The notes: generated from the sequence alone by a model not told the origin. A DNA stretch of 19,530 nucleotides from Paraphysomonas bandaiensis (GCA_965644295.1 CBFFRP010000654.1:1-19530), one strand, 5' to 3'. Numbered from the stretch's first letter, positions 1-19,000 are shown. Numbers and translations: made by a program.

Positions 1-2186
1 TTAATCCCTAGGTGTGTGGTCACGACTTTCAGGTATTTTAGACACCAATCATGGGAGGCCTTGTCTGTGATTGTGAGAGGAAGGTCTGCTCCGAGGTAAT
101 GTATCGACTCTAGTGATGTTTGGATAGGGACTGGGTGTGGACGCCACGACCAGTCGTAGAGAATGATGTAGCCAATGGGGTCGGAGGACTTGTTGGAATC
201 TTGTAGGATCGGAAACACTGTGCAAACTACTTTGGGGATAGAGAGTTCCATTCCCGAAAGTACGCAGAACGCAGATATTTGTTGGGCAATGAGTTGGGCA
301 GCGTGTATGGATTTAGCTATTGTGTTAAGATCATCCGCGAAGGAGATCTTTATTTCGCCGGTAGTCGGAGTCGTGAGTTGAATAGTTGGTAACGTTGGAC
401 TCGTTGTTGACAGTTCAATGTCCAGCCACGTGAGAAGGATGTCGTAGAGTGCCACCCAGGCGCATGTGGATTCTGTGCCCCCTTGGGTGATACCCCTTTC
501 GGCTTCGAAACCCAGACTGAATAGTGCAATGAAGTGGCCGTCTGCGGACAGGAGGTCAAGGAGAGAACGTGGCTCTATGTTGTTTGCCATGAATGGTGTC
601 CAGGGAAATGTTAGACCGCCGGCATCTAAGTTGCCAAACCAGTCAACTACATCGTCCGGAACGCCCAGTCGTGCCCACGCGAGACGCATGAGGTTAGGCG
701 CAATTGAGTCGAAGGCCTTCTTGAAGTCCCAGAGTGTACATATATGCTGGTCGCCTTTTCGTCTTGCTTCTTCTGCAGCCGCGAGTACCCTTAGTATCGC
801 TGTGTCCGTCCCGTTCCTCCAGCGATAACCATGCTGGGACGGATGCAAAACTTTCTGTTCCTCCCATACGGTAAGAATTCTATGAGTGATTATCCTTGTT
901 AATATTTTCCTACTGACTTCAAGCAGACCAATCGGTCGGAGATTAGTGAGGGAGGATTCTCCTGGTTTCTTGAGAATGGGAGACATTACCCTGTCTCTCC
1001 ACCAAATGGGCACATGTTTATGTTTCCAGAGAGATCTGGTGAGGATGTAAGCCTCTCGCTGAACTACCGGTGGCCAGGATTTGACCATGTTGGAGGAGAC
1101 CATTGAGGGTCCAGGCGCGCGGTTGAAGGAGAGAGAGTGAAGTGTGCAGTAGAATTCATCCTGGGTGATGTCTTTTGCAAGAGTAGATTTGAGTGTGGCT
1201 GCCATGGCCGGAGTGGTCTTGGTACAAAGGGCCCGTCGTAACCCCAGTTGCAGGGGAAGAGGGATTTTCGAGCGGGGGTGGAGTGGTTCCTGGCATGTCG
1301 CTGAGCCCGGATCAAGAAGGGATTTCCACCATGTAGGGTCATCCTGGAGCTGTTGTGCTACAGGGTCAAGTCCAGGAGGTTTGGCATGATGTTCACGGAA
1401 GTGCGCATTAATGCCTTCATGAATGTCTTGCGGTGTTGTGAGGATGTGTCCGTCAGTTGTTTTCACCGTGGTAAGTCGGAGTGGTGTTTTGACCTTGAGA
1501 CCAATTTTCTGAAGAATTGCTTGAAGTCTTTTCTGCTGTAGCAGTGCCTCCATCTGATTGGTGCGAGCCGTGAGTCTAGTCCGCATTTCTGTCCTGGCTC
1601 TTCCATGAAGAAGTCCTCTCAGTCGCAAGGCAATTCGGAGAAGGTTTTTCTTGGTGGCTTGCTTTTCGTTCCAACCCAGGATTACTCGTGGGTCCGCGTT
1701 GCGATGGCTGCACCAGAAGTTGATGTCTGATATGCCTTTGATGTGACCCTGAGAACTCCTGAGATAGGAGTCCCATCGGATGAACCATGCAGTGATGATT
1801 TCGTGGGTGGGGGTGGTTGCCGGGGGGCCGCGCCATCCATGCCGTTTGTATCCGGCAGAATTGAACATCTTTTGGATAATCCGCAAAACCATGATCATTC
1901 CTTCCTGTATTACTCTCATTTCCGGGGAAAAGCCATTCTTGAACTTTGAGCGTTTGCGCTGACAACGTTCGTGTAGTCGTGTGCTATAAGTACATGCAGG
2001 ACGCTTCGCTTCAAGCGAAGCCTGGAGGGTTATGTGATGGATGGCCGCTAGTCTGTTGGCTGCCACCTCAGGAGGGAGTATGGCAGACGATCCGTTGTCT
2101 AAATGTGGTAGTTGTGCATGAAGTTGGAGGAGTCTTGCGGTGTATGCCTGTACTTCCTTGGAGTCCTTCGGGTTTACATTGAGACG
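1..2186 (-). CDS. LINE polyprotein, reverse transcriptase part (frameshifted continuation, partial, open to the window edge)
   Basis: My manual translation; absent from the ORF track because there is no stop before the edge. The frame is stop-free from 2378 to 1 and contains RAPGPS, PILKKPG, NLRPIGLLEVSRKI, QHGYR, WDFKKAFDSI, GITQG, FADD (330-341) and HYLG. Confidence 0.92.
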
Positions 2187-5100
2187 GGGGGATTCGGAGG
2201 TGCGACTCAGGTGGTCGAGGGTCAAGATTGACTGGTACAGTGAAACCGACCCAGACCGGTCGATGATCGAAGGCTGCTGCGAGTAGTGAGGGGGAGTCAA
2301 GGCAGCCAGTGTCCGTAACAGACATGTTCGGAAGTAACGGCGTGTGTAGAATATGATCGATCCGCGATATTCCTTTGTCTAATCTGTGGAAGGTATGATA
2401 TGTTTTCCTGGGTAGGAGAAGCTCATGGAGTGGTGCAGCCAGTTGGAGTTTGTCGGCAAGTGGTCGTATGTCTCTGCCTTTCGGATTTGTCTCCATGGAG
2501 CCATTGAAGTCGCCGGCGACAATGACAGTATGGTCCTTGGCTCTGGCTTTAGTGACCCATTTCGTAAGGATGTTGCATAGGAGCTTGTAGGGGTCAGCAG
2601 TACAGATACCACGGGACGCTCTCCCTAGCTTGGTCAATTTGCTCCATAATGTGCAAGAGCCTGGCGTGGATGGCTTCGGGGGTAGATAGACGCTTATTAG
2701 TACTAGGGTGTGCGCCACCGACGTTTTGAACTCTAGTCGGCTCACTAAACCAAGTCCCGTAAAGTCAGCCTTTGTGAAGGCGAGACGGCGCTTCCAGTAT
2801 TCGCTGATTATGACTACTGTACCCCCCATTAGTGGGTCTCTTGAAGTCAGTTTTGGCTGCTTGCTGAGGAAGAGGCATATTCTTGATCCCTGGATTGCAT
2901 CTTCTATGATACGTGTGAAGAAGTTGGCCTGAGTTTCTGTTAGACGGACATCCTGTAATAGGAGCACGTCCAATTTTTGCCGCTTAAAGTGTCGGATGAT
3001 AGCTTGGACTTTGCCTGTGTGAGATGCCGGATTGCCATTTGTGTTCCATGTGGAGAGTCGGAGTCCCATGGCTGCTCCCGAGGGAGCCTTGGGGATGCTG
3101 CTGGAGGTCTCTGTAGGAGTTCCACTCTTGTCTGCAAGGAGTCTGTCCCATACTGCTTTATTGGCACCGCCTATGTCGCTGTCGTACGCAGCCCTGGCTT
3201 GGATTAATATCTCAAGTGGCCAGCGTTGATCACACCAGTAATGATGCCCGTAGTTGATGAGAAGTTCTTCATCCTTAGCAATGGGACGTATTGTACGGAC
3301 ATAGAGGCGTTTATTTTTCGTGACAAACTTGACATTAGCCATGTTTGTGGCTAGGGGGTCATTAATATACCCAGCTTCGCATGTTACACATTGTCGGACT
3401 TGGTCAAAGCCATCTATTGCGAAGGTACCAGTACTGTCTTGAACTATGTAATCAGAACGCCTTGCAGACTGACTCAGCTTTGTTAGTGGATAGCGTTTGC
3501 CTTTGTACTCAGCAATGATGACGTCTGCTGGGAATGTGTTCTTCGCATAAAGGGATAGTCCTTTGGCAGTGTTATCGGCGTACGCAATGTAGAACTTTCT
3601 TGACCAGTCCTTGTCCCAGCTGGTGGTATCAAGTGCTGGAGTTGGTCTGATCGTTCGTGTGGTCGTGGATTGGTGTGAGTTGTGAAGGTTCGTTGGTTGG
3701 TCACTTTCATCGTAATTTACGACCTTTTTGGCTTTCCGGGTTGGCTGGCATCGACTTGTCAACGCAGTTTGGGCGTGTTTCAACTGCATCTTCTTGTGCG
3801 ATGGTAGTGCTCCAGGGGTTGAAGCCTGCAGAATCTGTCGATTTGTTCGTGCTAACTTGGTGCTGCTGGACGAGGTTGTTCCGGTGCTGGTCGTCTTTGA
3901 TGTCCTATTGTTGTTCGTGATTGAGTCCGCGGGAAGTGTAGGTGGAGCGATGGGGTCAGACGTTGAGAGTATACTGGTGGCCAAGGTGTTTTCAAGAGAT
4001 AGTAGGGCGTTGTCTAGGGCAGTAGAAAGACCGGCAGGGTCTAAGAGGAAGTAGTGAGCATCTTGTAGTATGACATGGTAGTAGTTATCACGAATAGCGT
4101 TCCTAAGTTCCTCCACCTTCCATGCGATGTTATAAGCTGCTTTGTCAGTAGGGATGCCTACAATGCTGAGATAATTACCATTTTGCGCCCACGTCGTGCA
4201 GGGGTTGATAGTAGAGGCTAAAAGGTGGACCTCTCGCACTGAGAGCCAGTGAGTTATGTCGTCCTCCGTAGTGTATGTTGTTTTGGCAGGTATTAAAAGT
4301 GCGGCCTGTGCGTGATCCAACTTATGTCGTAGTGGCTGAAGTGTGTGATGGGCCATGCACTCCCGTTGCATTGTGTCGAACGCTTGGGTGCCTAATGTAT
4401 TTATAAAAGATGCTAGCGTGTGACGGTCCTTGCGTTGTTTGAGGTCTAATTTCAGACAGGAGCGAGTGTGTCGCCTGCTTGAAGCAAGAATGTGCAGATG
4501 ATAGAGTGTGCTGTATGCGCAGTATCCATCACTTGGGATATGTTGTTGTGTGCGAAGGGCTGAGGGTCTGAGGGTGAGGCGATAGACTCTGCTCATGTCG
4601 CACATATGGAGCCTGAGTTGTCGACGGTCCGTGGGGTTCATCTGCCGTAGTTGACGTCGAGCTCTCGGTGACAAGGAGACTGCAATTACTTCCCTCTGTT
4701 CCTGTTGCTCTCTTTGCTCATGTAGCATAGATGGTACAGTTGACGGTTCAGAAGTCCAGATGATGTTGGTGCTCTGTCTGGAGGTCTGGTGTTGTAGAAA
4801 ACAGGATAGCCGCTCCTGAGTTCGTGTTAGAGCGTGCATGATGGAGGTGGGGATATTTGTTGCATTTAGTATGTGAAACCCATGCTGGCTGCGTATGATG
4901 TCATGGGTTACCACAGTGTTGGTAGAAGCGTGCACTGTTAGTGCCTGTCTGGAGAATGGTGATAGCTGTGCCCAACCAGGCGCCAGGTGCGGTTGAACAG
5001 CGTCCCATAGTCTGTATGGTATGGAGAGAAGATCGAGTAGCAGTTGGAAGTCCTCCGTGTCTAGATGTAGTCCTGTGTGTGGATTCGAGGATTCATATTG

Positions 5101-5292
5101 CATAAGTGTCTTACGGAGAGTGACAGTGGCTGTTGAGGGAATACCCTTTGTCAGGCAAAGGGTCCGCACATGCCTAGATACAACATGAGTGGAGTCTGCC
5201 CAGGGTTTGTTGCCATTCGCGAGATGCTGGGCAACTAGTAGGGCGCTGTGCGTGGTGTCCAATTTGTGCTCTGGTAGCGTGAATGATATCAT
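2068..5292 (-). CDS. LINE polyprotein, N-terminal part: OTU-like protease (about 4042-4542), SET domain (about 3235-3597), APE/EEP endonuclease (about 2240-3063)
   Basis: 1074-aa ORF with ATG in GCCAACATG context. OTU-like motifs IPSDGYC...WLSVREVHLLA...QDAHYF. SET motifs KGLSLYA...EYKG...YINDP...EELLINYGHHYW. APE motifs LSTWNTNG, VLLLQD, VAGDFNG, SRIDHI, DHRPV. Confidence 0.9.
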   Translation of the reverse strand: MISFTLPEHKLDTTHSALLVAQHLANGNKPWADSTHVVSRHVRTLCLTKGIPSTATVTLRKTLMQYESSNPHTGLHLDTEDFQLLLDLLSIPYRLWDAVQPHLAPGWAQLSPFSRQALTVHASTNTVVTHDIIRSQHGFHILNATNIPTSIMHALTRTQERLSCFLQHQTSRQSTNIIWTSEPSTVPSMLHEQREQQEQREVIAVSLSPRARRQLRQMNPTDRRQLRLHMCDMSRVYRLTLRPSALRTQQHIPSDGYCAYSTLYHLHILASSRRHTRSCLKLDLKQRKDRHTLASFINTLGTQAFDTMQRECMAHHTLQPLRHKLDHAQAALLIPAKTTYTTEDDITHWLSVREVHLLASTINPCTTWAQNGNYLSIVGIPTDKAAYNIAWKVEELRNAIRDNYYHVILQDAHYFLLDPAGLSTALDNALLSLENTLATSILSTSDPIAPPTLPADSITNNNRTSKTTSTGTTSSSSTKLARTNRQILQASTPGALPSHKKMQLKHAQTALTSRCQPTRKAKKVVNYDESDQPTNLHNSHQSTTTRTIRPTPALDTTSWDKDWSRKFYIAYADNTAKGLSLYAKNTFPADVIIAEYKGKRYPLTKLSQSARRSDYIVQDSTGTFAIDGFDQVRQCVTCEAGYINDPLATNMANVKFVTKNKRLYVRTIRPIAKDEELLINYGHHYWCDQRWPLEILIQARAAYDSDIGGANKAVWDRLLADKSGTPTETSSSIPKAPSGAAMGLRLSTWNTNGNPASHTGKVQAIIRHFKRQKLDVLLLQDVRLTETQANFFTRIIEDAIQGSRICLFLSKQPKLTSRDPLMGGTVVIISEYWKRRLAFTKADFTGLGLVSRLEFKTSVAHTLVLISVYLPPKPSTPGSCTLWSKLTKLGRASRGICTADPYKLLCNILTKWVTKARAKDHTVIVAGDFNGSMETNPKGRDIRPLADKLQLAAPLHELLLPRKTYHTFHRLDKGISRIDHILHTPLLPNMSVTDTGCLDSPSLLAAAFDHRPVWVGFTVPVNLDPRPPESHLRIPPSQCKPEGLQGSTGIHRKTPPTSCTTTTFRQRIVCHTPS

Positions 5293-5431
5293 GTTGGCTT
5301 GTATTGAGCAGCAACAATTATGAATTATACTGGCAACCGTCTAATTCAATATGAAAGAATATTTCTACTGCTTTTAAATCTGCTGTAACTGTGTTTACTG
5401 ATATTGCTACAGCTCTTTAAGAGAATTAGTT

Positions 5432-5563
5432 AGATAGCTATATGCGTATGTCATGTTTTCAACATCAGGATATTCGGTTGGAGCGTTTGCACTTCCAAGA
5501 GAGGCAAATGCAGCAATATGATAATATATTATTACAAAACTCAAGTAGCAGGGGCAACATGTA
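5432..5563. repeat. Dispersed direct repeat, copy A (about 130 bp, upstream of the LINE ATG)
   Basis: 5432-5522 aligns ungapped to 7291-7381 with 78/91 identities by manual count. Similarity continues with gaps to 5563/7423. Confidence 0.85.
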
Positions 5564-5896
5564 GATTACATCTAGGCCAATTTTAGTTAGTTCAAATAAT
5601 GTTCAAATCTTTTTAGCATCTTGAAAAAGTGTATTTTACTAAACTTTTTGTTGCGTAGTGCGCTCAAATTATATAATGTTGTGCTTTACATATTACTTCA
5701 ATTTCTAACAACACAGACATTCGATCTTGTGGTATTATCAGCCTCTTTCGCGGGCCCCTACCCCAAAAAGGGCATCCCCTTGATTAACCGCGCCTATTGA
5801 CACTGAAGGACTACACGTTCGTAGCCAGCTCTCACACTTACTTACCAGGTATATCAACATTTTGCTTGCTCACTGCGTTAAGTGATAGAGAAAAAA

Positions 5897-5951
5897 TGGT
5901 TGCACCTTGGTGCTTGCGGTGACGCACAAGCAGCTTTCGTAGCGCAAAATA
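5897..5951 (+). repeat. Conserved hairpin motif, copy 1 (TGGTnnnACCTTGGTGCTTGCG-GNRA-CGCACAAGC)
   Basis: Contains the 16-nt core ACCTTGGTGCTTGCGG found identically in four places. Loop is GTGA. Confidence 0.85.
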
Positions 5952-6027
5952 ATTATTTAGCAATAGGCATGTATGTAAGTGTTAAAACTAAACAGAAATC
6001 TATCTTGTACTGTATACTAATATGCGA

Positions 6028-6090
6028 CTATTTGACGCTACGGAGGCTGCTTCTGCATCGCCGCAAGCACCAAGGTGCGACCACCTCCGT
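6028..6090 (-). repeat. Conserved hairpin motif, copy 2
   Basis: 53/63 ungapped identity to 14381-14443 by manual count. Loop is GCGA. Inverted relative to copy 1. Confidence 0.85.
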
Positions 6091-7290
6091 GTTTTGTCCT
6101 TAAGGTGAACTAGCCTGGATGCTTGACTTCAGCAGGTAGCCCAATATCCCGGATTTCTTTGAGGTGGGCCCATTCCCGAATGCCTGTTTATTCATCAAGA
6201 CCCAAAGACGTCTACACAAGTACCACCTCCTGTACCCACACAAGCATTGGGCTATGAGTGGGCAGAAAATTTTCTGCTGATGAGTATATATAGGCGGATC
6301 ACGTTAGTATCCCAGAGAAATAATTCAGTCAGCTCAAAACAATAAGAAACAAAAAGTTGAGTACGAGACGCACGAGTCATGTAGAATGTACTGCAAATGC
6401 CTGTTTTTAGGGTACCTATATAATCTTATTATCATAATATACATACATAATAATCATATATATACTATAACCTTTGAAGTGTCTCTCGTAACTTGCCGCT
6501 AAGTTGTTGTCATACTATCCATCATTATATTATTTGATGTCGAAAGTATTTTTGTTGTGTACCTGAGTATATAAGTCTCTTACATTTTTTGTTCATTAAA
6601 TATATATATATATAGGTGTTACACAACATATATATAATAGATATTTTATGGACATGTCGCTGCTTACCTCAGAAATAATACCTCTAAATTGTGTATAATA
6701 ATATGTTAGAAACTAGTTCGCCAACTGCGAATGTTGGTGACAAACGATGACAATCTGATTCTGGGTCCGATACTAGTTCTTCAACCACTGAATATAATTA
6801 CTTTCAGTTAAACTGGTTGCATTTATCTTCCTCGTAGCAGCATTTTTCCTGTTGACCTCACGTCGTGCTTCTCGTCCAATGTACGGTGCATTGAGCGCAC
6901 TTCTCGGTTCGTCATGTAAAAATCCATCTGACTCTTGAATAACTAATCGTGGAGGGATGCACTTAATTGCAGCTAACTTGTGCCCGATGTATTGAACAGT
7001 AGGTTGTGCTCTAATACCTGGGCGGCCACAAAGACTTCTTGTTCCACGTTCACGTGCTTCAACATGCATTTCTAATACACCTGTTCCACCAAAAAGTCTG
7101 GTTTTAAATGGAACATTAGACCACATATACTCTCTCCGCCATCATCTCAACAATTTCTATATAATTGTCACCAGCACATGCTTTGTAAGTTGTTTTGACG
7201 CCTAAAGGGGATCCTCTGAGGGTGATTCTCTGAAATAGTGACTCTTTCAAAAACGAATTGTACTACTACTACTGTAAGTAGTAGTGCTGA

Positions 7291-7423
7291 AGATAGCTAT
7301 ATGCGTGTGCAATGTATCCAAAGTCAGGCTATTTGGTTGGAGCGTTTGCAATCTCAAGAGAGGCAAATGCAGCTATATGATGAGAATATGATAGTACAAA
7401 ACACAAAGCAGGGCCAACTTGTA
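7291..7423. repeat. Dispersed direct repeat, copy B
   Basis: Shares AGATAGCTATATGCGT, GGTTGGAGCGTTTGCA and CAAGAGAGGCAAATGCAGC blocks with 5432-5563. Confidence 0.85.
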
Positions 7424-7935
7424 ACGCAATAAATACTGCTAATAACAACTATAATTGCGACTTTTTCTTTATCTTTAACCTCTCAGATACAAATTACAGT
7501 AAAATAATAACTCAATCTGGTGAAATCGCATTACCAGGTTTTGGTATTACCTCGGTTAAATATGCATTTTAGATAGGACGCTACCTCAAAAATGTATTGC
7601 AATATATTTTTCTCGGCCCTTGATTATATAGGTACATGTGTAGTCAGCAGGGCAAGGTAAAAATATATTGGATTGCAATATATTGCAATTATTTATTTCA
7701 AGCAAACATGTTTGTTATTATTTTCGTCATTCGCATATATTTCAGTGGCAAAAGAGTGTATGCGCAGTCGTGACCGTTTAGTGTTTGAGCTACTGTAAAA
7801 CCATATAGTGTCGCATGAATAGTGGATTGCATGTATATTCCCATACCACCTTTCTCGTGCGGGTCGTGGTTTATAATGTACACAGGGAATACGCCTCAGA
7901 TTTACAAAGATCTCTATTATTTAGTCGACAACTAT

Positions 7936-9202
7936 CTAAGTCAAATTCGTGCTGCAACCAGGGCAATTATGAAGAGAGTCGTGAATGAAAATATCGCACT
8001 CCACACAGAATAGATTCGTACATTTAGGACACTTCATGCGCATAGAATCGCTAGTAAATCTAAAAAGGCACCCATAGCAGGAGGCTGAATTGGCAGTTTT
8101 AGTCTCTAAATTCTTTGTACACTCAGTGAAGTTATCAACAGGGAAAAGGTGGTGATGAGAACGCGCAATATGAGAAGAGGAGTTTAGCTGGAGGGAACAT
8201 ACGGCGCATTGACTGGGGATCTCTGTAACCCGAGCGCCGCATCTGGGACATACGTAAGACGTGGACGCCACTGTAACTCGTCTAGCCTCGAAAGCAAACA
8301 GCGGTACAGGGTCGAAATGTCGACTCGGAAAACCCATATACACAAAATCTGTAAACTGAGAGGAACTGGATTTGGCTTCAGGAGGAGGAGTGGTATGACG
8401 TAGCAACAGCTCGTTGAGATGCAGGGTATCTAATGCAAGGGTGAATGTTCCGTTGGTTAGCTCCGCCAGTTTGCGACATATGTATATCTCCGCAGACAGA
8501 CAAATTACGTTACATCGTATCTTCATCTTACGCACTTCCTGTTGCAAAATTAACTACCCAATTTGAACCATAGCAGAAAAAATCTCACCTCTATGACCTT
8601 AAAAATGTCACCGGGGTCACAAGTCGCGAGTGATGAATATACAATAACTATCTCTCGACAACCATAGTCCGGTATATCACGCAGGGTTGCCATCGCCAAT
8701 AGCAGAACATTCTGCAGTGAGGCACTACCCTCAGTTCGTAGCAATCCGCCAATGGCCTGTATATGACTCTTGGAATTGCCTGAAGAGCCAGTAAAGAGTA
8801 TAAACCAACTCTAAACCATGAAATACCTGACAAGTCGGTTAACTTTTCTGCGATGCGATCTCTTGTCACAGCAACACTCAGTTGCGAAATGGGGTTCTGA
8901 TCGAAATACTCCAATACAAATTTTTGTGCCGTTGATTTCATAACTTCTAAACGAGAGGGACGATAGTCCGTATCTTTAGCAGACACAGAGCAGTCCAGGA
9001 ACACCATCATATAACGGATCAATCCACGTCTCACAGACTGAGTTAATCTCTGTAGCTTCGCTCGCTTGGATCGCTCCTGGTCATTGTTTATAGTCATGAT
9101 GTTTCCTTCCGAGTCTTCCTTCACACTCTCCCATGTCCTCTTCATGGACTGCTCCCAGCTATAGGAGACACCACCCTCATAGTCGGCCTGCATAGACGCC
9201 AT
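7936..9202 (-). CDS. GTF2H2: General transcription factor TFIIH subunit 2 (p44/Ssl1); exons 9202-8827, 8779-8589, 8538-7936; about 389 aa
   Basis: YSWE...RTWE, RRGLIRYM, DYRPSRL, EYFDQNPISQL, LSGN, SLQN, TCDPGDIF (vWA domain). C4 finger YVCPRC...CAVC, HIARSHHHLFP, and C-terminal CYGC...CPKC...CVECDIFIHDSLHNCPGC. GT-AG introns of 47 and 50 bp give an intact 1170-nt CDS. Confidence 0.95.
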
Positions 9203-9739
9203 TTTAGGGGAGAACACGCTGCTATTACGTATGAGTCAATACTAGACTTAGCATTACTATCATATCGTGCTCTTAAGACTACAATCGTGCTGCCCATATA
9301 CACACACAGTACGAGGAATATACAGCAGCCTACTTTATTCTGCTGTGCGTATGCACGTACAGAGTACTTTTATACAATAAATGCGTAGTTTTGTACGCAC
9401 AAATCTCCCATTTTATGCTTCGTAAATACTCTGTATGAGATACCAGGAACGAGCGGGCTGGACATGCAGAGTAGTTCTGTTGTGTGTACACACCGCACAC
9501 ACACACGTACACATACACACATACCAACACACACAAACACATACTTGCGTTTTTTTCGGTGTGGTTTCTGTGGCTTTGTTTCAATTCACAGCAGCAGTAT
9601 GTACACACACATATACAGACACCAGTCGACCCGTTCAAATTTCTATTTCCCACCTTGTTAGTCAGGCACCCACCCCTCGTCTGGTTAGGAATAGTGTTCT
9701 TCACGTAGTCTATTCGTAGGGTTGAAACCATTCTCAGTC
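9203..9739. promoter_or_regulatory. Putative bidirectional promoter region between divergent GTF2H2 and kinesin genes
   Basis: 537 bp between head-to-head predicted start codons. No specific promoter elements were identified. Confidence 0.45.
9488..9544. repeat. Imperfect (CA)n/(AC)n microsatellite
   Basis: ACACACCGCACACACACACGTACACATACACACATACCAACACACACAAACACATAC. Confidence 0.8.
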
Positions 9740-12700
9740 ATGTTAACGGATGCTAGGTCCTTATGGTACTCTGCTAGTAACGTGTTGCAAAGTTTGAATG
9801 ATAACATCACTAATGCTCTGGAAACATTCGATCAGATAGATGAAGATGATGAGGAGGCCAAGTCGGAGTCGGAGATTTATAAGAAACTGCTTGATGATGC
9901 GCAGATGCAGCACTTTGAGCTGTCAAAGCAGTTTCGTGTACTTGTAGCTGAGAAGGACTCTGAGATCGAGGTATGGAAATCGAAGTGCTCCGAGCTTTCT
10001 GGTGGGGATGTATCAGAAAGCGATGTTAAGGCTAGTATTGACTCAGCCAAGTTGGAGGCGGAGCTTTCTGTTTTAAAATCTGCGATTAGTGAAATGGAAG
10101 ATGTGCTGAAAAGCTCACTCCACGAGAAAAATGAGTTGACGGCAAAGCTGATAAAGTACCCTGAGTTAGTTTCTGAGGTTGAGGAACTGCGGAGCAGACT
10201 AGCGGACACTATTTCCTCCAGTGGCGAGAATGATGCCAAGAAGACAGGAGAAATCGATGATTTAGTAGCAGAGTATTCGATGTTGGCAGCAGAGTCAGAG
10301 AAGCAGAAAAGTGCGGATAGCCTGCGCATCCGAGAGTTGGAGCTTGAAAATGAAGTTCTGGTTACGAAGATGCATGCGTTGGAACATAGCATTACGGAGC
10401 TCGCAGACCGATCTGTTACAAGTAGGTTATCTGTGTGTTCTGTCTGCTAAACTGCCTCCTTTCAATTTGTGTGCATCGATTACTTAATATTGAGTATTTT
10501 TATGATTTTTGTAGCTTCGTCTACCCCTCCCTCCCCTGTTAAACCTCAGAATAACATACCTCCTGCGCCATTATCTGGAGGAGAAACTGCTCAGCAAGTG
10601 AAGGAGCTGCGAGCCAAAATTGTAAATCTCGAATTCGATCTCAGTGAGAAGGAAGAAAAAATGCAAGAGTTACAGATGGCCCTGAAGAAGAGCAAGGAGG
10701 CCGGTAATATAAATTAAACATGATATTGATTCACATTTGGCTGGCTAACGGAAGGCATAGGTGACGGCGCGAGTAGTTCTTCTGATACCGGTGTATCTGC
10801 TGAGCAGCTCAGGACTCTCCAGAACTCCCTTTCCAAGCGTGTGGACGAAATTGCAAACCTTCAACAGGACGTGACGCGACTACAAGTAGAGAAACAAGAA
10901 GCAGAGGATGCAGGGAAAAAGTTTTACGAACAGCTTCGGGCTCTGCAGCGGGAGTCAGACAGTGAACGCAAAAAGTCCGAGAATGAGGCATCGTCACTTG
11001 AGGAGGCACAGGAACTTAGAAGACAATTGGAAAATGCCCGGAATGAGATGGAAAGTATCAAAGAAGAGTCTGAGAGACGTATTCAGGAGCTATTGGAAGA
11101 AGGTCGGACAGATCGTGCCGCAGCTTTGGCAACTGTTCAGGTGGTATTGATGAGTTTTTGCTGCTTTGGACCTCAGATTGTGTATTCGCACACATTCAGG
11201 AGGAAGTGGATTCACTTAAGGCTGATATCTCTACACTGCAGTCAGAGAAGAGTACTTCAGAAAATAAGTTGCAGCAGAAGATAGAGGAGCTAAGCTCTGA
11301 GTTGTCAGAAGCTACGCAGGAATTGGAACGTGTTAAAGCAGCTCACGCTAATGAGCTGGACTCGGTCAAGGAGGAGGTTGAAAAGGCCATGCTCTCATCA
11401 ACTGATGAGGCATTAAAGAGCAAGATCGATGAGCTGACGGCTAGATACGAAGAAAAACAGAGAGAGGTTTTCAGCTGACCGCTTGCAATATGCACCTCAC
11501 TTGAAATTGTATAGCTCTCTGCAGGTCATGTGCAGGCTCTCGCTGAATCGGCTAGGGAGGTGGAACGCTTGAAGAATAATATCTCTGAGCTTGAAGACAA
11601 GATAACAACATTACAGAATCAGCATGACTCTGCGCTAAAGGAGTGTGAAGATCGTATTCGAGCTGAAGGAGTAGATCTTGCTAGCCAGCAGGTTTCGTCT
11701 ATCATCGGAGTAAGATTAGGCTTCATTTTCCCTTATGTAGGTGGAAGCAGCAAAGGCCACCGCATTGGAAGAAAAGAATATTGCTCTGGAAACTCAAAAA
11801 ACGGAGCTGGAAGAGAATGCACTTGGTCGTATCAAAGATGCGATCGCAGAGCAGATAGCTCTGCATGAACAGGCCATAATTGATGAAAGAGGGCGACTTA
11901 ACGAGGAAAAGTTAGTTCTCATCTTGTTATCTTGCTGACTGATCATATATGATAATATAGAGCTGAAGCCATGCGTCAGCAAGAGTCGGAGATGCTTGCA
12001 GCGACAGAAATTCGCATTGCAAACATGCAGGAAGCTCATGAGAAGACTCTATCTGATCTGAAAGCAGAATGTGACGCCGCCCTCGCAAAGGCAGTGGAGA
12101 ATGAGCGCAAGGAATGCGAGAAGGCGCTGGACGATGCCAAGAAGAGTGCAGAAGAAGAGAAGAGGGCGCTTGAGACGGCTCATAAGGCTACACTTGAGAC
12201 TCTGCATCAAGAAATGGCTACAATTAAAAACCAGCTGGATAATATTGAAGCAATGTGAGTGTCAGTGAAATATATTTGTTGTTTCGATTCACTTCAAGGT
12301 AGTCACACTGAGAAACTGGAGGCTGCACTTTCTGAGTTACGTGTGGCAAAGGATGCGGAGCGAGATGCAGCCCTCGAGGCTCTACGAGTCGAAATGCAGA
12401 CTCTAGTTGATTCCGCCTATGCTGCCCGGGATGAGTATTTAGCTCTGTATACGAAGGTTAACTTATATTACTACTCTTCTTGAGTGCGTTCTGACCATAC
12501 ATTAGGAAAACAAAGCCAGGAAGGCTATTCACAACAAGCTGATGGAGATACAAGGTAATATCAGGGTGATCTGCAGAGTGCGACCTATCCTCGAAGTAGA
12601 GCACAAGTCAGGTGGTGGGAAATGATAAAATAATATTAGGATATGTTACCTTTCGTTTCCCAGGGGAGGATGTAGATGTGACTGAGATACTCTCCGATGA

Positions 12701-13915
12701 GGACATTGTTATTCATCGCGACTTGAGCACAAAGAATCGATTTGAATTCGATAGAGTGTTTGCACCTTTGTCGAGACAAGAAGAGGTATTCGAAGCTGTA
12801 CAGCCCCTGGTGGTGAGTGTACTGGACGGGTACAATGTCTGCATATTCGCCTGTAAGTAAACTTCGTATCATGATTCCGTCTGTAATCTCTTTACTAGAC
12901 GGTCAGACAGGTTCTGGAAAGGTATGTCTTGTCTGAAACTGCGTTGATGTTGTTCAATTAGTCGATAGACTTTTACTATGGAAGGATATGGCACCGACAT
13001 TGGAGTATCACCCAGGGCAATTTCAGAACTGTTCAGAATTGTACAGGAATGCTCGGAGGATTGGTCGTACACAGTATGGATCTCACCACTTAACGATTAT
13101 TGTTTATGACTTTTTCTGATTCAGATTACATTCAGTACGCTAGAAATTTACAACGAGAGCATTCGAGACTTACTCGACAGCAGCGGAAACAAAGATAAAC
13201 TTGATGTCCGCCAGACACCTGAAGGAAATGTTGTGGCTGGACTTACGGAAATTGAGGTGACCAGCCCGGAACAGGTGCTGGAACTCATGTCGCAGGGCCA
13301 GAGAAATCGTGCTGTAGGCGCGCATGACATGAATGAGCACAGCAGTCGTAGTCATTCTATCCTCACTCTTACGTGTCGCGGAAAGAGTCTCCGGGATGGA
13401 AGCAGCACGTTTGGTAAGCTACACATGATTGACCTGGCGGGATCTGAGCGTGTGGGCAAGACGGATGCCACGGGTGATAGACTCAAGGAAGCGCAGAACA
13501 TCAATCGTTCTCTCAGTGCACTTGGAGATGTGATAAATTCTCTCGGGAGCAAGAAAGCTACACACGTGCCTTACCGAAATTCGAAGTTGACATTTTTGTT
13601 ACAGGTTCAATGTTGATTCTTCAGTCGATGCTTGTGTAATGTGTTTTCCAGGATTCTCTTGGTGGAAATTCTAAGGTGTTGATGTTTGTCAATATATCCC
13701 CAGCAGTATACAACGTGGGAGAGTCGATATGTTCTTTGAATTTTGCTGCTAGATGTCGAAATGTTGAGCTCGGTCAGGCCAGAAAACAGGACGATGGTCC
13801 ACGGTCATCCCGTAAAATTGCCGCAGGCTCCGCCTCTTCGGACTCTACTCCGGTGAAATCCTCTTTGTCCAGCAGCAGGCGCATTTCTTCGACAACCCCG
13901 TCCGTTAGAAAGTAA
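9740..13915 (+). CDS. Kinesin-14 family motor (KIFC3/KCBP-like C-terminal motor) with long N-terminal coiled coil; predicted exons 9740-10421, 10515-10703, 10761-11140, 11200-11466, 11515-11691, 11741-11910, 11961-12254, 12303-12456, 12506-12611, 12664-12852, 12899-12921, 12969-13073, 13125-13604, 13652-13915; about 1159 aa
   Basis: Kinesin-14 neck [31 protein letters not shown]-loop YGQTGSGKT, LEIYNE, switch I NEHSSRSH, switch [27 protein letters not shown]. 13 GT-AG introns (46-59 bp, one 93 bp) join into a 3480-nt frame. The start codon and some coiled-coil junctions are less certain. Confidence 0.92.
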
Positions 13916-14380
13916 TTCCTCATACCAGTCGAGATATATTGGTGTTGCAATGTAGTTCATATGATGAAATCCATATAGATGTTGCCCCTGGCATTTTTGA
14001 CCGCGCAGATGATATTTTCGTCTCAGATAGGTATAAGTAATAAGAGGCAATTCGCTATTTCTCCGATAGGTATACTCTACACCACCCAAATCTTCAAAAT
14101 GAATCCAGATACTTATGGGTTTTGATCTCGCTGAATTATGATATATTTGGAGAAAACACCCTTTTCGAATGGATATATTACTAAAGCTAACCTCTAACTA
14201 TGTAACCCTTAAAATTTCTTCGTAGCACGCAATGTTTAGTTTTGCAAACAATTAATATTGAAGGTCTTGTTATCTAGCAATAGGCGTTAAAAACTCATGC
14301 CAATATAGTGGCTAGTTGAATGCTAGACATACTAGTTAGACCTCTACCCATAACTATTCAGCACAAATTCTATTTTCCTA

Positions 14381-14443
14381 CTATTTAGCGCTACAGTAGC
14401 TGCTTGTGTGTCACCGCAAGCACCAAGGTGCGACCACTTCCGT
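14381..14443 (-). repeat. Conserved hairpin motif, copy 3
   Basis: Same core with loop GTGA. Lies at the 3' end of a putative LINE remnant. Confidence 0.85.
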
Positions 14444-15005
14444 TCTTGATGTTGTTTGTGAGTTTCGCCCTGCTCGTGTGTCTTAGGACTCGCTGGCGCA
14501 TGTTGTCCGGAGGTCTCCCCTTGGGATAAGGCTCCACCAGGCTCTGAGGCACAGGGTTATGCATTAAGGTCCTGAGTGTACCGAGCACTAGATGTGCGTG
14601 CTGAGAGGTGGGTGGTATGGTGGTATGTGGCGTTGTCGCCGTGCACCGTTTGAGCGTCGCGCATATGTGTAGTTACCGGAGACGGCGTCGCTGTCTAGGG
14701 CCTGATGACGTCATGCGGTCCGGTGCTATGGTCCTACGTGTATGAGTGGGGGGGTTCCTATGTGTGGTGGGCGGTGTTCCAGTCTCGGTTCGTCTGTGGA
14801 TTCCTAGTAATCGTAGCACCCTTGGGCGTTTCCATTTCTGTCTATGTTTTGGACGAGGTCGAGGTAGTAGCCTAGGGGGTCCTTTCTGTAGGGTAACGTA
14901 TCGCCTACTTCGATCTTGGATCATTAGCTTTGCTGCAGCGAAAAGCGGTAGAAGCAATCTGATGACCGCTGATTCGATGTTGCGTAGTCCTTGGGGTGTC
15001 AGTGA
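14381..15005 (-). mobile_element. Putative 5'-truncated 3' remnant of a non-LTR retrotransposon
   Basis: Minus frame open 15005-14673 (SLTPQGLRNIESAVIRLLLPLFAAAKLMIQDR, then an R/P/T-rich tail). Same A/C-rich minus-strand bias as the left LINE, and it ends in the hairpin motif. No catalytic motif is visible. Confidence 0.45.
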
Positions 15006-15020
15006 CTAATTATTAAGAGT

Positions 15021-16000
15021 TGTAGTCCTAAGGTATTTGAAGTGTGAACGTTACATATATATTTGAAGATGTCTATATATATAAGATATAAGATCGAATG
15101 CTATTGATTTTGGTAGTTGAGACAACATGAATTTAGCGAACGGTACTGATCATAGTTATAAGTAAAGCATTATTGTGTGCATTGTAATTTAACTAACTAG
15201 TGCTAAATTCTGATATCCTACTACTAATAAAGAGGCTTGTGCGTTACCCGCAAGCACCAAGGTAAAACCACTATATAAACCCAATAACAATACAGCAACT
15301 AGTACTCTTTTAGTATTTCATCTCTTCGTCACTGTCGTTCTTACTGTTGTTGTACTGAATATATGTTTGGTCGATCGATAATGGGTGTCAAGCTAACTAA
15401 CGCAGCAGCATCGTTTCTTACATTTTCCACTTCGACGGCCTTATCCAGTTGTGGCGATGTCGGATGATTGAGTGTCATCCATATGGGTATCAGTAGACAT
15501 ATCCTCTTTATCCATGCTTGCACTGGATAGTAGGTAGATAGATAGCGCTTAATTTCACTAACACTTAACTGTGCTGATTATATCCTTTTATCTTATAATT
15601 CTGCCCTATCTAAAAACTCGTATAACTTAGCCTATTTCTCCATAGCAGTTCTAGAAATGGGTTTCTAGCCATAAATAGCTAGTTTCCACTTCCAGAAATA
15701 TCCTTACAGTAATCTCTTATCATCCTACTATCTACTCCATACTGTCTCATATAACGTTTACATACTACTCATACTACCATAATACTGTACGGGCTACATT
15801 AAACGTCCGTTACGTCCGTATGTACGGATAGTCCCGGTACACTCCAACCCTGTATCTGACCTTAATACTCATGTCTCGTGACCTTGTCTTAACCATCTTC
15901 TACCTCTTATCTCATGTTGTTTCTTATACTACTTCACCTTGGCTCTCATATCACAACAACCTTATAACCCACCATTTCCACTACACCCAAGATTGCTACA
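15021..16000 (-). repeat. Predicted 3' LTR (about 980 bp)
   Basis: Begins TGTAG right after the PPT (16000). Candidate end is CTACA at 15025-15021, a 5-bp terminal inverted repeat. The 16000 end is well supported; the 15021 end is tentative because the 5' LTR is outside the window. Confidence 0.6.
15235..15271 (-). repeat. Conserved hairpin motif, copy 4 (shorter)
   Basis: GTGGTTTTACCTTGGTGCTTGCGGGTAACGCACAAGC on the minus strand. Loop is (G)GTAA. Lies inside the predicted LTR. Confidence 0.8.
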
Positions 16001-16010
16001 CTTCCCCCCT
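16001..16010 (-). promoter_or_regulatory. Polypurine tract (PPT) of the Gypsy element
   Basis: Minus strand reads TAG (stop) GGGGGAAG then TGTAGC. The purine run AGGGGGGAAG directly abuts the LTR-start TG. Confidence 0.85.
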
Positions 16011-19000
16011 AATCCGAGACCTGAATAGGTCTCTCGACATAACTGTCGGGTTTCATATTAGTCGCATGTACCCTTACAGTCTTACCATTAATCATAGTCT
16101 CATACAATACTGGGTTAATCCTCTTCGTCACCTTGTATGGACCCTCAAATCTTGGTTGTAACTTCATGGACACCTTATATTTCTCTTTATCCGATGCCGA
16201 TGAAAATGCTCTTACTGGACATCTCCTTCTGAAGAATAGATCCCCAACCTGGTACTCCTTAAACGGTAGATGTCTTATCTTACAATCCTTCCTTCCCTCT
16301 TCATGCCGTATCTCTGCCGCATGAGTGTGAGTGTCTCTATTCATCCTCAACCAATTGTTCCTCGTCCTCTGAGTAGTAACTACCCATGCCCACTGCAAAG
16401 CTGTAGTTAACTTATCTACCCAAGCCTCATCTACGTCCCGTTCTTCACCCATTACACTATTCTGCTCCTCTAGTTCACACATTCCCACTCTCTCAGGTGT
16501 AGATGACTCTCTTCCAAACATCATATAAAAAGGTGTATATCCTGTAGCAGCATTTACCGTTGAATTATACATCAGTTGCACCGTTGTCAAGAAAACATCC
16601 CAATCAGATTGTCGTGCATTAATGTAATGGTGTAGTTGGTCCTTCAATGTCTTGTTCATATTCTCTACCAACCCATTAGATCTTGGATTCTGTGGTGTAG
16701 TACATACTCGGTGAATTCTATACAACTCAGCTAATTTCGTATCCAACTGGTTTCTAAACTCCCTTCCTCGATCGGATACCACCATCTTTGGTACTCCAAA
16801 TGCATTATACACCTCTTTCACTAGAGCTTGCGCTACACTTTCAGCTTCCTTATCTGCCAATGGGAATAACCATACAAACTTGCTCTTAGAATCCTTACAC
16901 ACCAATATATGCTTGTTGCCATTATCTGTCTCTGGAAGGTCCACTACCAAGTCGATATGTAATCTTTCCATGGGTTCCTTAACCTCCGGATACTCCATTG
17001 TCGGGACTTTTGGCCTCCTGTAGTACGCCTGTCTAAGCTTACATGATATACAAGTCCTACAGTGCACACCCAACTCTTCTTTCATGTTTTCCCCATAGTA
17101 ATGCAGAGCCATGGTATTCACTGCTCTCGTTGCTCCTGCATGTCCTAGACCTTCATGAAAGATCTTAATACATGTACGCTTTAACCTCTCAGGTACCCAT
17201 CTTTGCCATATAGTCCTTCCCGCAGGTGTCCATCGTCTATGGATTCCATATACTCCTTCACCCATATCGCGCTTGCTTATGACCAAACCTTTTTCCACTT
17301 CTTTAACTTCTCCTTCGTTCATCTCTTTGTCCCATTCTCTTAACTGTTCATCTCTCATCTGTTCCGCTCTCCATTGTAAAGGTGTCGTCGGCCACTTAGC
17401 ATCATCATCCTCATGTTCTACATCATATAAGTCTGTCAGCATCAAAAGTCCTGAAGGTCCATGTACATAGAACGGGTCATCGTCATACTTGTGCGCCTTT
17501 CCTGTCAACGACCTACGATATCCCAACACTGCCTTCTCCGAATGTGAATAGAAAATCTTCTGCACCTCATACAGTTGCCCATTCTCATCATCTATAAACT
17601 TCTTTCCCACCAAATATTGCAACTTTTCGGCCAACTCCGGACACTGCAGCTGATTATCATACACATATTTCTCTTCTTCTAACTCGCTTAGGCCTTGTAC
17701 CGCCTCCTTGACTCTTATCGCTTTAGTCTTTGCCGCCTCCCCTACTTGCTCTTCACCATTTCCTGGTGTCTCTTCGACCGTCTTCTTACTCCGTTCTCCC
17801 CTCTGTTCCTGGATCTTCTTCCTCCTACTCTCTTGCTGAATCTTGGCAGACTGTTCTGATGTCAACAAATGCAGCCGATCTTTCCAATACTCCACTCCAT
17901 ATGATAAAAAGATCTCGTCTCCCGGTCTAATCGTTGTGGTCGCTATCACCAACAATTTCTTTCCCTTCACTTTTACTCTCGCATTCACCAACGAATCATC
18001 AATAGGGTCGTTGCAATACCTCCCATAACAACTATTCCTGTCTCTAGCGTCTATATATGCATACTCTCCTCCCCCCATAGGTACTGAAAAGACGTAATCC
18101 TTATCATACTCTTCTTTTTCTATTTCATCCTGTGATGGTCTCTCACCCTCATAATCACACACTATGGACCCTTCCTTCATATACTTCGTCGCGAATAGTC
18201 CTTCGCCTGCTCCTTCGATTGTCGACTTCAACACTTTCACTCTATTATATCCCTTCTTTCTCTTCCGTCTCATATCACTCAAATCTTCTGGACTATCCAA
18301 CGTCTCCCAATCGGCCCTATGTGGTGCTTCCCTCACCGGCTCTATTCCTTTCTTCTTTGGTCTCAACACTCTATCCGATTTTCCAAACCTCTTCAAATAC
18401 TTCTTCATATTCTCTTCACCTTCCATCTTACTTCCCATATTCCTTCTCCTAGTCAGTGCATTTATTATCTTGATCACTTCTTCTTCATCTTTGTTCTCTT
18501 GTTTTTCTTTATCCTGACTCCTCTCAGGTGTCTTCTTTTTTCTCTTCTGTGCCCTCTCTATCATCTTACGTCTCTTCATCTCTAAGTCTTTAGCCAACAA
18601 TAGATCTTCCTCTGTTACCGTTCCTTTATCCCATTCTAGATCATCAGCAGTAAGGTATACTGGTTCTTCCCCTCGTTGTAGTAGCCTTGACACTGCATCC
18701 GCATCCATATGCTTCGTTCCTTGCTTATAGTGTAGTCTAAAACTTAAACCCATCAAATCCAGTAGATATCTCATCAACCTTCCATTGTTAGAAGCCGTTT
18801 GTCCCTTGTACATGTATACCAGGCAATTGTGATCGGTATACACATCCACCTCTAACGCCCCCCTTACATACACATCCCAGTACATCAAACAGTCATGTAA
18901 TGCCTTGCACTCTATCTCCGTCGGTGCATATTCTCTCTCCGTTGCCGTCAATCCTTTACTCCAATAGCCAACTGGTCGTCTATTCTCTTCTTCATCTGGC

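What the first reader, a model, noticed from the sequence alone, without database searches (positions are those of the whole stretch)
3235..18240. Two unrelated retrotransposon classes (LINE and Gypsy) carry the same atypical NDP-type SET domain inside their polyproteins
Seen in sequence: the LINE SET (3235-3597) and Gypsy SET (17884-18240) align motif by motif. The pairs are KGLSLYA/GEGLFA, EYKGKR/DYEGER, DYI/DYV, AIDG/YIDA, CEAGYINDPL/CYGRYCNDPI, KNKRL/KGKKL and EELLINYGHHYW/DEIFLSYGVEYW. Both replace canonical NH(S/C) with NDP and lack pre- and post-SET Cys clusters. Established: minimal SET domains ending in YGxxYW resemble the chlorovirus vSET histone methyltransferase and bacterial SET proteins; retroelements are better known for capturing chromatin readers (chromo, PHD) than writers. 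Inference: a mobile methyltransferase module has been swapped between, or independently captured by, LTR and non-LTR elements in this lineage. It may be a transposon-encoded system for writing chromatin marks at insertion sites or countering silencing. I cannot verify novelty without a search.
Basis: partly seen in the sequence, partly recalled or inferred. Interest (0 to 1): 0.92.

Follow-up and report, generated by a model that had tools for sequence, protein, structure and literature searches.

The report
SET methyltransferase domains inside two retrotransposons
A LINE and a Ty3/Gypsy jumping gene of a marine micro-eukaryote each carry a conserved SET (lysine-methyltransferase) domain inside their main enzyme protein, so both lineages seem to bring their own protein- or chromatin-marking enzyme, an activity nobody has tested.

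Summary
Window 3235-3597 and 17884-18240 both encode Pfam-significant SET domains that align to each other (28% identity, E 1e-13). The first lies 59 residues upstream of the APE endonuclease of a LINE. This copy is dead: 5'-truncated, with a private 2-bp deletion. The second lies between RNase H and integrase of a Ty3/Gypsy pol. Neither is a one-off. The genome holds at least 46 stop-free LINE SET copies in four diverged subfamilies and three SET-bearing Gypsy families, two of them shown to be complete elements with 99.5-99.9% identical LTRs. Metagenomes contain the same two architectures. In the LINE lineage SET is as constrained as APE and RT, and the catalytic Tyr and SAM-binding motifs are invariant. 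'ND' replacing 'NH' marks a large compact-SET family, not just these elements, although none of the 20 other SET loci read in this genome has it. The best tree puts LINE and Gypsy SETs in separate clades, but an AU test does not exclude a sister relation (p 0.149), so swap versus separate capture is unresolved. Prior art is survey-level only (Helentron SET ORFs; a tally of TE-SET fusions). This scan already noted the same thing on other contigs of this genome. Activity and substrate are untested.

The parts
1..5293 (-). LINE copy, 5'-truncated at 5293 and running off the contig start. It is a dead copy of a young family.
   Evidence: 99.83% identical to the full-length copy on C440 over 5295 aligned positions, with 7 substitutions and one 2-bp gap.
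90..971 (-). Reverse transcriptase domain of the LINE, in the frame 3-2378(-).
   Evidence: Pfam RVT_1, E 6.1e-16, aa 470-763 of that frame.
2185..2186 (.). Site of a 2-bp (GG) deletion that frameshifts this copy between APE and RT.
   Evidence: Gap against C440. Contigs from all three runs that cover the site carry the GG (table 4).
2338..3051 (-). APE-type endonuclease domain of the LINE.
   Evidence: Pfam Exo_endo_phos, E 6.4e-10, aa 748-985 of ORF 2068-5292(-).
3235..3597 (-). LINE SET domain (ND-type, compact), ending 59 residues upstream of the APE domain.
   Evidence: Pfam SET 42.8 bits. AlphaFold model with core pLDDT 88-98; Foldseek top hits SET7/9, MLL3/4, SETD8 and PR domains. Motifs invariant across subfamilies.
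3973..4620 (-). Candidate OTU-like cysteine-protease module (Cys box GYCAY, His box AHY).
   Evidence: Both boxes are invariant in four LINE subfamilies. Pfam gives no hit. The model has pLDDT 67, and 46 of the 50 listed weak Foldseek hits are OTU deubiquitinases, but all have E >= 0.02. Inconclusive.
15450..19530 (-). 3' part of a Ty3/Gypsy element; it runs off the contig end.
   Evidence: 97.5-99.3% identical to a sister copy on C656, with similarity ending at 15450.
15450..16008 (-). Presumed 3' LTR / 3' untranslated end of the Gypsy element.
   Evidence: Lies between the pol stop (16009) and the end of similarity to the C656 copy. The LTR status is inferred, because the 5' end is off the contig.
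16009..19530 (-). Open pol frame (1173 aa within the window): RT tail, RNase H, SET, integrase.
18751..19149 (-). RNase H domain of the Gypsy pol.
   Evidence: Pfam RT_RNaseH_2, E 1e-25, and RT_RNaseH, E 6.5e-23.
17884..18240 (-). Gypsy SET domain (ND-type, compact).
   Evidence: Pfam SET 48.7 bits. phmmer against EHMT2 gives E 1e-6, full length, with the catalytic Tyr aligned.
17197..17883 (-). Conserved SET-to-integrase linker module (about 230 aa).
   Evidence: The homologous segment of the L026 element finds nine external Gypsy-SET proteins at E 6e-11 to 3.5e-36.
16099..17196 (-). Integrase: H2C2 zinc finger, rve core, SH3-like C-terminus.
   Evidence: Pfam Integrase_H2C2 4.4e-9, rve 2.7e-11, SH3_Tf2-1 4.2e-6.

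Best explanation
SHOWN: the window holds two independent insertions about 10 kb apart, flanking ordinary host genes. One is a 5'-truncated, frameshifted copy of a young, multi-copy LINE whose giant single ORF reads (long N-terminal region with an OTU-like module)-SET-APE-RT. The other is the 3' part of a Ty3/Gypsy element whose pol reads RT-RNaseH-SET-linker-integrase. In both lineages SET is an integral, long-retained part of the polyprotein. It sits at the same position in four LINE subfamilies and three Gypsy families whose synonymous sites are saturated. It keeps the SAM-binding Gly, the Asn of the NH motif and the catalytic Tyr, and in the LINE it folds as a compact SET. Both belong to one ND-type compact-SET family that none of the 20 other SET loci read in this genome belongs to. 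INFERRED: the domain is an active SAM-dependent protein-lysine methyltransferase. It is made in cis with the DNA-cutting and DNA-joining enzyme (just upstream of APE in the LINE, upstream of integrase in Gypsy), so it acts on nucleosomes or other proteins at the target site during integration. The most likely effect is a histone-lysine mark that helps integration or delays host silencing of the new copy. I put about 0.85 on the anatomy and retention part, about 0.6 on catalytic activity, and about 0.35 on histones at insertion sites being the substrate.
For: Domain calls are above Pfam cut-offs. At least 32 stop-free LINE SET copies are 96-100% identical, with further subfamilies at 69, 50 and 48%. 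Three Gypsy families are present; the 39% family has nine copies. Two families are complete elements with 881-bp and 547-bp LTRs 99.9% and 99.5% identical. Invariant G13, N79, D80, N88, E111, Y116, G117 and W121. LINE SET dN is 0.21, against 0.19 for both APE and RT and 0.34-0.39 for linkers and the N-terminal region, with dS saturated; Gypsy SET dN/dS is about 0.2. The model matches SET7/9, MLL3/4 and SETD8 at E 1e-9 to 1e-7. The same architectures occur in metagenome proteins. Poly(A) metatranscriptome contigs at >=99% identity lie on the LINE, including parts of SET. No ND among the 20 other SET loci read in this genome.
Against: No activity, substrate or chromatin data exist. The His of the NH motif is replaced by Asp, and no solved structure with ND was found, so SAM binding is assumed by analogy (PRDM9, with NC at this position, is active: my own knowledge). 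In Gypsy, SET is less conserved than RNase H and integrase (dN 0.40 against 0.17 and 0.27) and about as conserved as the upstream linker. SET7/9, the best structural match, methylates many non-histone proteins. RNA-library contigs do not prove transcription or strand (caveat). The window's own LINE copy is dead and its Gypsy copy is incomplete.
Confidence: 0.6

Rival explanations
1. SET methylates non-histone proteins, such as the element's own RT or integrase or a host restriction or silencing factor, rather than chromatin.
For: The best structural matches are SET7/9, an enzyme with many non-histone substrates (my own knowledge). No histone-reading or nucleosome-binding domain accompanies SET.
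Against: The position next to the DNA-cutting or DNA-joining module in both classes fits action at the target site. All closest solved relatives by sequence profile are histone methyltransferases or PR domains.
Confidence: 0.2
2. SET is a non-catalytic tether: it binds a histone tail or another chromatin protein and steers integration, as chromodomains do in chromoviruses.
For: The canonical His of the NH motif is lost. PR domains, some of which lack activity (my own knowledge), are among the nearest relatives. No chromodomain is present on the integrase.
Against: The catalytic Tyr, the GxG Gly and the Asn are invariant over deeply diverged subfamilies, which a pure binding role would not require.
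Confidence: 0.12
3. On origin: the domain passed directly between the LINE and Gypsy lineages (TE-to-TE exchange), rather than being captured separately from a common pool of small ND-type SET genes.
For: Same subtype in both, and ND absent from the 20 other SET loci read in this genome. Both fall in one loosely supported group in the 184-row tree (SH-aLRT 91). The AU test does not reject LINE + Gypsy as one clade (p 0.149).
Against: The best trees place this genome's LINE SETs in a 33-row clade (97/95) that contains no Gypsy SET. The two are only 28% identical, and the backbone is a polytomy.
Confidence: 0.15
4. SET is a decaying passenger or an artefact (a host SET gene hit by insertions, or a chimeric assembly).
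For: The window's LINE copy is broken, and the Gypsy family of the window has only one stop-free SET copy.
Against: Same position in dozens of copies on different contigs, stop-free frames of up to 3,000 aa or more, saturated dS with low dN, and the same architectures in unrelated metagenome assemblies.
Confidence: 0.03

Closest known systems
Retrotransposons that captured cytosine DNA methyltransferases (dinoflagellates, charophytes; de Mendoza et al. 2018, PMC5890265) and a methyl-CpG-binding domain (arthropod Copia; PMC6673714)
   Same: Retroelements carry an epigenetic writer or reader inside their coding region, in many recent copies.
   Different: There the module is a DNMT or MBD, not a SET. 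That paper does not mention SET.
SET-domain ORFs and OTU-like proteases carried by Helentrons, e.g. the Phytophthora infestans proto-Helentron (Thomas et al. 2014, PMC4067079)
   Same: A mobile element of a stramenopile carries a SET gene, and Helentrons also carry OTU-like cysteine proteases. This is the same pair of modules suspected in the LINE here.
   Different: Helentrons are rolling-circle DNA transposons, and their SET is a separate ORF of about 153 aa likened to Clr4. It is not a domain fused into an APE-RT or RT-RH-IN polyprotein.
Survey of chromatin domains fused to TE domains in 172 eukaryotes (Grau-Bove et al. 2022, 10.1101/2021.11.30.470311)
   Same: States that SET methyltransferases are among the domains found in gene models with TE domains. 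Its Table S6 lists one 'SET RVT_1 DnaJ' model with a PRDM-like SET and LINE similarity in Symbiodinium microadriaticum.
   Different: It is a tally of gene models, not a description of element families. The held (truncated) table has no RNaseH-SET-integrase or SET-Exo_endo_phos architecture.
Chromoviruses (Ty3/Gypsy with an integrase chromodomain)
   Same: A Gypsy lineage with a chromatin-related module built into pol, probably linked to integration.
   Different: The chromodomain is a reader at the integrase C-terminus. Here the module is a writer-type SET between RNase H and integrase, and no chromodomain is detected.
Compact SET enzymes without Cys-rich flanks: SET7/9, SETD8, PR domains (PRDM9/12), chlorovirus vSET
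   Same: Same fold and size class. Best Foldseek hits are SET7/9, and the best profile hit is PRDM12. The C-terminal YGxxYW resembles vSET.
   Different: All score about equally (45-56 bits), so there is no close relative. None of the matches printed residue by residue has ND. vSET matches only over 30 residues at E 0.014.

Membership tests
SET domain (Pfam PF00856) | Profile match above the curated gathering score | tested here: met
   42.8 and 48.7 bits against 22.4. Also met in all seven related elements.
SET domain (Pfam PF00856) | SAM-binding GxG-type glycine and the Asn of the NH(S/C) motif | tested here: met
   G13 and N79 are invariant in nine transposon SETs. N aligns with the N of EHMT2 'NH'.
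SET domain (Pfam PF00856) | His of the canonical NH motif | tested here: not met
   Asp in all nine and in 149 of 184 nearest relatives. This is a family-wide substitution, not a decay.
SET domain (Pfam PF00856) | Catalytic Tyr in the C-terminal motif | tested here: met
   Y116 is invariant and aligned with the Tyr of EHMT2 'FDYG'. Y in 178 of 184 relatives.
SET domain (Pfam PF00856) | SET fold | tested here: met
   LINE SET model with core pLDDT 88-98; 370 PDB matches at E <= 0.001, and all 50 matches listed are SET or PR domains. The Gypsy SET was not folded.
SET domain (Pfam PF00856) | Lysine methyltransferase activity | not testable with these tools
   Needs a biochemical assay.
SUV39/EZH-type SETs | Cys-rich pre-SET and post-SET modules | tested here: not met
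   No Cys clusters flank either domain.
PR/SET (PRDM) domains | PR-domain profile match together with C2H2 zinc-finger arrays | tested here: inconclusive
   PRDM2_PR scores 28.1 and 29.9 bits on the isolated domains (cut-off 27) but 22.8 and 26.2 on the whole ORFs. No zinc-finger array is present.
Chlorovirus vSET | Full-length similarity to vSET | tested here: not met
   Only residues 92-121 align, E 0.014.
Non-LTR (LINE) retrotransposon | APE endonuclease followed by RT in one ORF; many copies with 5' truncation | tested here: met
   architecture; copies; window copy truncated at 5293. The 3' end has no poly(A) tail, which the class does not require.
Ty3/Gypsy LTR retrotransposon | RT-RNaseH-integrase order and flanking LTRs | tested here: met
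   Domain order. LTR pairs were found for the two sister families. The window's own copy runs off the contig, so its LTR pair could not be seen.
Chromovirus | Chromodomain at the integrase C-terminus | tested here: not met
   No Chromo hit in any of the pol ORFs.
OTU cysteine protease (LINE N-terminal module) | OTU profile or fold with a catalytic Cys and His | tested here: inconclusive
   No Pfam hit. Cys and His boxes are invariant. The Foldseek list is dominated by OTU enzymes, but every E >= 0.02 on a pLDDT-67 model.

The most novel reading that the evidence does not exclude
A compact ND-type SET is a mobile 'chromatin-writer cassette' that has moved among selfish elements: LINEs, Ty3/Gypsy elements and perhaps Helentron-like transposons and giant viruses. 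It is kept because the element itself methylates histones at its integration site to steer insertion or escape silencing, and in LINEs it may work together with an OTU-type deubiquitinase.
Probability: 0.2. Interest if true: 0.85.

Novelty: new variant of a known kind. Interest (0 to 1): 0.62.

Why it matters
Transposons are known to borrow chromatin readers, and in a few lineages DNA methyltransferases. A histone-type lysine methyltransferase built into the replication enzymes of both a LINE and an LTR element, conserved over deep divergence and present in young, apparently expressed copies, would mean that some mobile elements write protein or chromatin marks themselves instead of only being targets of host marks. 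The families here offer stop-free, near-identical copies, clear catalytic residues to mutate, and two different integration mechanisms (target-primed reverse transcription and integrase) carrying the same module. This makes the question of what a transposon gains from its own SET directly testable.

Tried and rejected
(1) Plus-strand reading of the given coordinates gives only stops. (2) Giant-virus link: the ESM Atlas places both SETs nearest to the same clusters of small Nucleocytoviricota and Bacteroidota SETs, but a scan of viral contigs with the transposon-SET alignment found no relative. The broader alignment A3 could not be used. This stays a lead only. (3) Context of short unlabelled neighbours in the tree (P0064, P0014, P0137): the contigs are 1.1-3.8 kb and uninformative. 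(4) Pfam on 40 neighbours found only SET, PRDM2_PR and one RickCE-like domain. It missed the APE similarity that phmmer detects in P0010, P0031 and P0081, so it cannot show whether those proteins are transposon-borne. (5) LTRs were not found inside the first 10-kb fetches but appeared after extension. (6) OTU assignment of the LINE N-terminal module: inconclusive. My by-eye label 'SET-OTU-APE' for P0046/P0150 is only partly backed: SET matches at E 2e-13 and a collinear APE start at E 3e-4, with no OTU alignment. (8) dN/dS between subfamilies is limited by saturated dS, so I rely on dN relative to neighbouring domains. (9) The 79-row 'transposon-SET' group of the quick tree was not recovered intact in the careful tree, whose 82-row group takes in six rows that lay outside the 79-row group. 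I do not claim an exclusive transposon-SET clade.
Full report
OBSERVATION. On the plus strand the two stretches translate into stop-ridden sequence. Each lies in a long open frame: 2068-5292(-), 1074 aa, and 16009-19530(-), 1173 aa, open to the window's end. Pfam calls SET in both, far above the gathering score (42.8 and 48.7 bits against 22.4). It also calls an Exo_endo_phos endonuclease downstream of the first SET, and RNase H upstream and integrase (H2C2, rve, SH3) downstream of the second. The two SETs align at 28% identity over 112 residues, E 1e-13. No Cys-rich pre-SET or post-SET flanks are present.

ANATOMY OF THE WINDOW. Window 1-5293 is 99.83% identical to a full-length LINE on contig C440. 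It differs by seven substitutions and a 2-bp deletion at 2185/2186. That deletion throws the RT (Pfam RVT_1, E 6e-16, frame 3-2378) out of frame with SET-APE. The copy is 5'-truncated at 5293 and runs off the contig start, so it is a dead copy of a very young family. Contigs from all three sequencing runs that cover position 2185 carry the missing GG, so the frameshift is private to this copy or is an assembly error. The Gypsy element occupies about 15450-19530 and runs off the contig end. A sister copy on C656 (97.5-99.3% identical) is interrupted inside its SET domain by an insertion of about 6 kb carrying a DUF7869 ORF. Between the two elements lie ordinary host genes, a TFIIH Ssl1/p44 gene and a kinesin, and a dispersed 756-bp repeat. 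The two SET-bearing elements are therefore separate insertions that happen to be neighbours.

NOT ONE-OFFS. The genome (62.6 Mb, 669 contigs) holds at least 32 stop-free LINE SET copies at 96-100% identity, in open frames of up to 3021 aa. Further LINE subfamilies have SETs 69%, 50% and 48% identical. All of them read (long N-terminal region)-SET-APE-RT in one frame. The window's Gypsy family is rare: one stop-free SET copy. Two other Gypsy families carry SET at the same place, RT-RNaseH-SET-integrase, with SETs 52% and 39% identical, and the second has nine copies. These two are complete and young. One is 10,281 bp with 881-bp LTRs 99.9% identical, plus a second copy at 99.5%. The other is 9,685 bp with 547-bp LTRs 99.5% identical.

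CONSTRAINT. Nine transposon SETs share invariant G13 (SAM-binding loop), N79-D80, N88, E111, Y116-G117 and W121. Y116 aligns with the catalytic Tyr of EHMT2, and N79 with the Asn of its NH motif. Between LINE subfamilies, synonymous sites are saturated. SET has dN 0.21, like APE (0.19) and RT (0.19), and well below the adjoining linker (0.34) and the N-terminal region (0.37-0.39). In Gypsy the SET evolves faster (dN 0.40) than RNase H (0.17) and integrase (0.27), but still with dN/dS of about 0.2.

FOLD AND NEAREST KNOWN SETS. An AlphaFold model of the LINE SET, built on a 70-sequence alignment, has pLDDT 88-98 over the core. It matches SET7/9 best (E 1e-9), then MLL3/4, SETD8 and PR domains. 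A profile of the family against all PDB sequences gives PRDM12, EZH2, LegAS4, MLL3, PRDM9 and G9a at about the same score (45-56 bits), and none of the matches printed residue by residue has ND. Substrate specificity therefore cannot be inferred by homology. vSET matches only over the last 30 residues.

HOW SPECIAL IS 'NDP'? An exhaustive profile search of 1.84 billion cluster representatives found 8,538 proteins at E <= 0.001 and 957 at E <= 1e-10. Among 184 full domains from the best 150 proteins plus this genome's SETs, 149 have Asp after the Asn. ND is thus the hallmark of a large family of compact SETs. The caveat is that the hits were selected with an ND-bearing profile. Within this genome, none of the 20 other SET loci that I read has ND; they have NH, NT or NA, or no comparable motif. 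Locally, then, the subtype was seen only in the transposon SETs. Twelve of the 150 representatives share flanking retroelement domains with this genome's elements. Nine are Gypsy (P0024, P0054 and P0142 have RT, RNase H and integrase; P0021, P0052 and P0117 the linker and integrase; P0007, P0015 and P0047 the conserved SET-integrase linker only) and three are SET-APE (P0010, P0031, P0081). All those looked up come from metagenomes and are unnamed. P0046 shows SET and, 750 residues later, a weak collinear match to the APE start.

ONE ORIGIN OR TWO? In a 184-row tree, all Gypsy SETs (this genome's three plus nine external with Gypsy context plus ten short proteins) form a clade (SH-aLRT 98). This genome's LINE SETs form another (99). 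Both lie in a 79-row group (91) that excludes the five other SETs of this genome that could be aligned. In a careful 100-row tree the LINE SETs (100/100) sit in a 33-row clade (97/95) with P0010 and P0081 and no Gypsy SET. The 21 Gypsy-type rows are one side of a branch (71/99). The backbone is a polytomy, and six rows that lay outside the 79-row group fall inside the broad group. Forcing LINE + Gypsy into one clade costs 14.1 log-likelihood units, p-AU 0.149. The data therefore favour two class-specific, old SET lineages drawn from one family, but about 120 columns cannot exclude a direct ancient exchange. A recent swap within this genome is unlikely, given 28% identity.

EXPRESSION AND HABITAT. 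The LINE stretch occurs in 20 public runs from 13 studies, mostly marine, seawater and hydrocarbon metagenomes. Two poly(A) metatranscriptomes hold about 46% of its sampled words. Contigs from these libraries lie on the LINE at >=99% identity, including 3379-3755 within and beside SET. A run guessed to be RNA covers 1906-4348, which is the whole SET plus APE. This is suggestive of transcription, but contigs cannot show strand or exclude DNA carry-over.

MECHANISM (inference). In both classes the SET sits just upstream of the module that cuts or joins target DNA, in the same polypeptide. The most economical reading is an active lysine methyltransferase delivered to the integration site, acting on nucleosomal histones or nearby proteins to aid integration or postpone silencing. 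Alternatives are non-histone substrates (SET7/9-like) or a non-catalytic tether. The LINE also carries, upstream of SET, a module with invariant Cys and His boxes whose weak structural matches are almost all OTU deubiquitinases. If real, SET plus a deubiquitinase would be a two-enzyme protein-modifying kit, the same pair reported as separate ORFs in Helentrons.

WHAT IS KNOWN. Papers I could search describe DNMTs in retrotransposons (PMC5890265), an MBD in Copia (PMC6673714), SET ORFs and OTU proteases in Helentrons (PMC4067079), and a survey noting SET among TE-fused chromatin domains, with one 'SET RVT_1' model in Symbiodinium (10.1101/2021.11.30.470311). None describes SET inside an APE-RT LINE polyprotein or between RNase H and integrase of a Gypsy pol. 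Repbase and Dfam could not be consulted. Earlier notes of this scan report the same LINE and Gypsy SET elements on other contigs of this genome. I re-derived the architecture, copy number, selection and shared subtype independently, and I add the exhaustive search, the trees, the AU test and the literature precedents.

VERDICT. This is a real, conserved feature and a new variant of a known kind (transposons carrying epigenetic enzymes). The evolutionary route and the function remain open.

Noticed in passing
L023:606-1097 (= G000 C644:3605-4096); also C566:348-719 and C505:4181-4552: The 3,731-aa LINE subfamily carries a second, different SET domain (NT instead of ND) about 1,300 residues upstream of the ND-type SET. 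Pfam SET scores 27.1 bits, above the cut-off.
   Followed up: partly
G000 C564:5678-6043, C599:3685-4050 and 11582-11947, C338:269247-269612 and 274784-275149, C51:5334-5693: A multi-copy family of SET ORFs of about 260 aa of the NT type, resembling the second LINE SET and the database protein P0147. It may be carried by yet another mobile element.
   Followed up: no
G000 C505:58018-62727: Three LINE-type SET copies spaced exactly 2,178 bp apart, which suggests a tandem array of an internal LINE fragment.
   Followed up: no
window 14255-15010 (fragments also at 5894-6322): A dispersed repeat of about 756 bp with at least 40 copies at 87-94% identity across the genome. It is probably a non-autonomous element.
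   Followed up: no
window 7936-9217 (-) and 13233-13616 (+): Host genes between the two elements: TFIIH Ssl1/p44 exons (Pfam Ssl1 and C1_4) and a kinesin motor exon (Pfam Kinesin, E 1.6e-47).
   Followed up: partly
L030:4892 to L031:1047 (G000 C656, about 8891-15046): An insertion of about 6.15 kb splits the SET domain of the sister Gypsy copy. It encodes a 521-aa ORF with DUF7869 (E 4.9e-23) and is probably another mobile element.
   Followed up: partly
P0024, P0142 (metagenome proteins): These external Gypsy-SET polyproteins appear, by eye, to contain an exonuclease-III/APE-like stretch upstream of RT; the source names P0024 'exodeoxyribonuclease III'. An endonuclease in an integrase-bearing LTR element would be unusual.
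   Followed up: no
L021:1536-1774 and L032:1089-1335 (LINE 3' end): The LINE ends in a 3' UTR of about 240 bp, conserved at 80% between subfamilies, with no poly(A) tail or simple repeat.
   Followed up: partly
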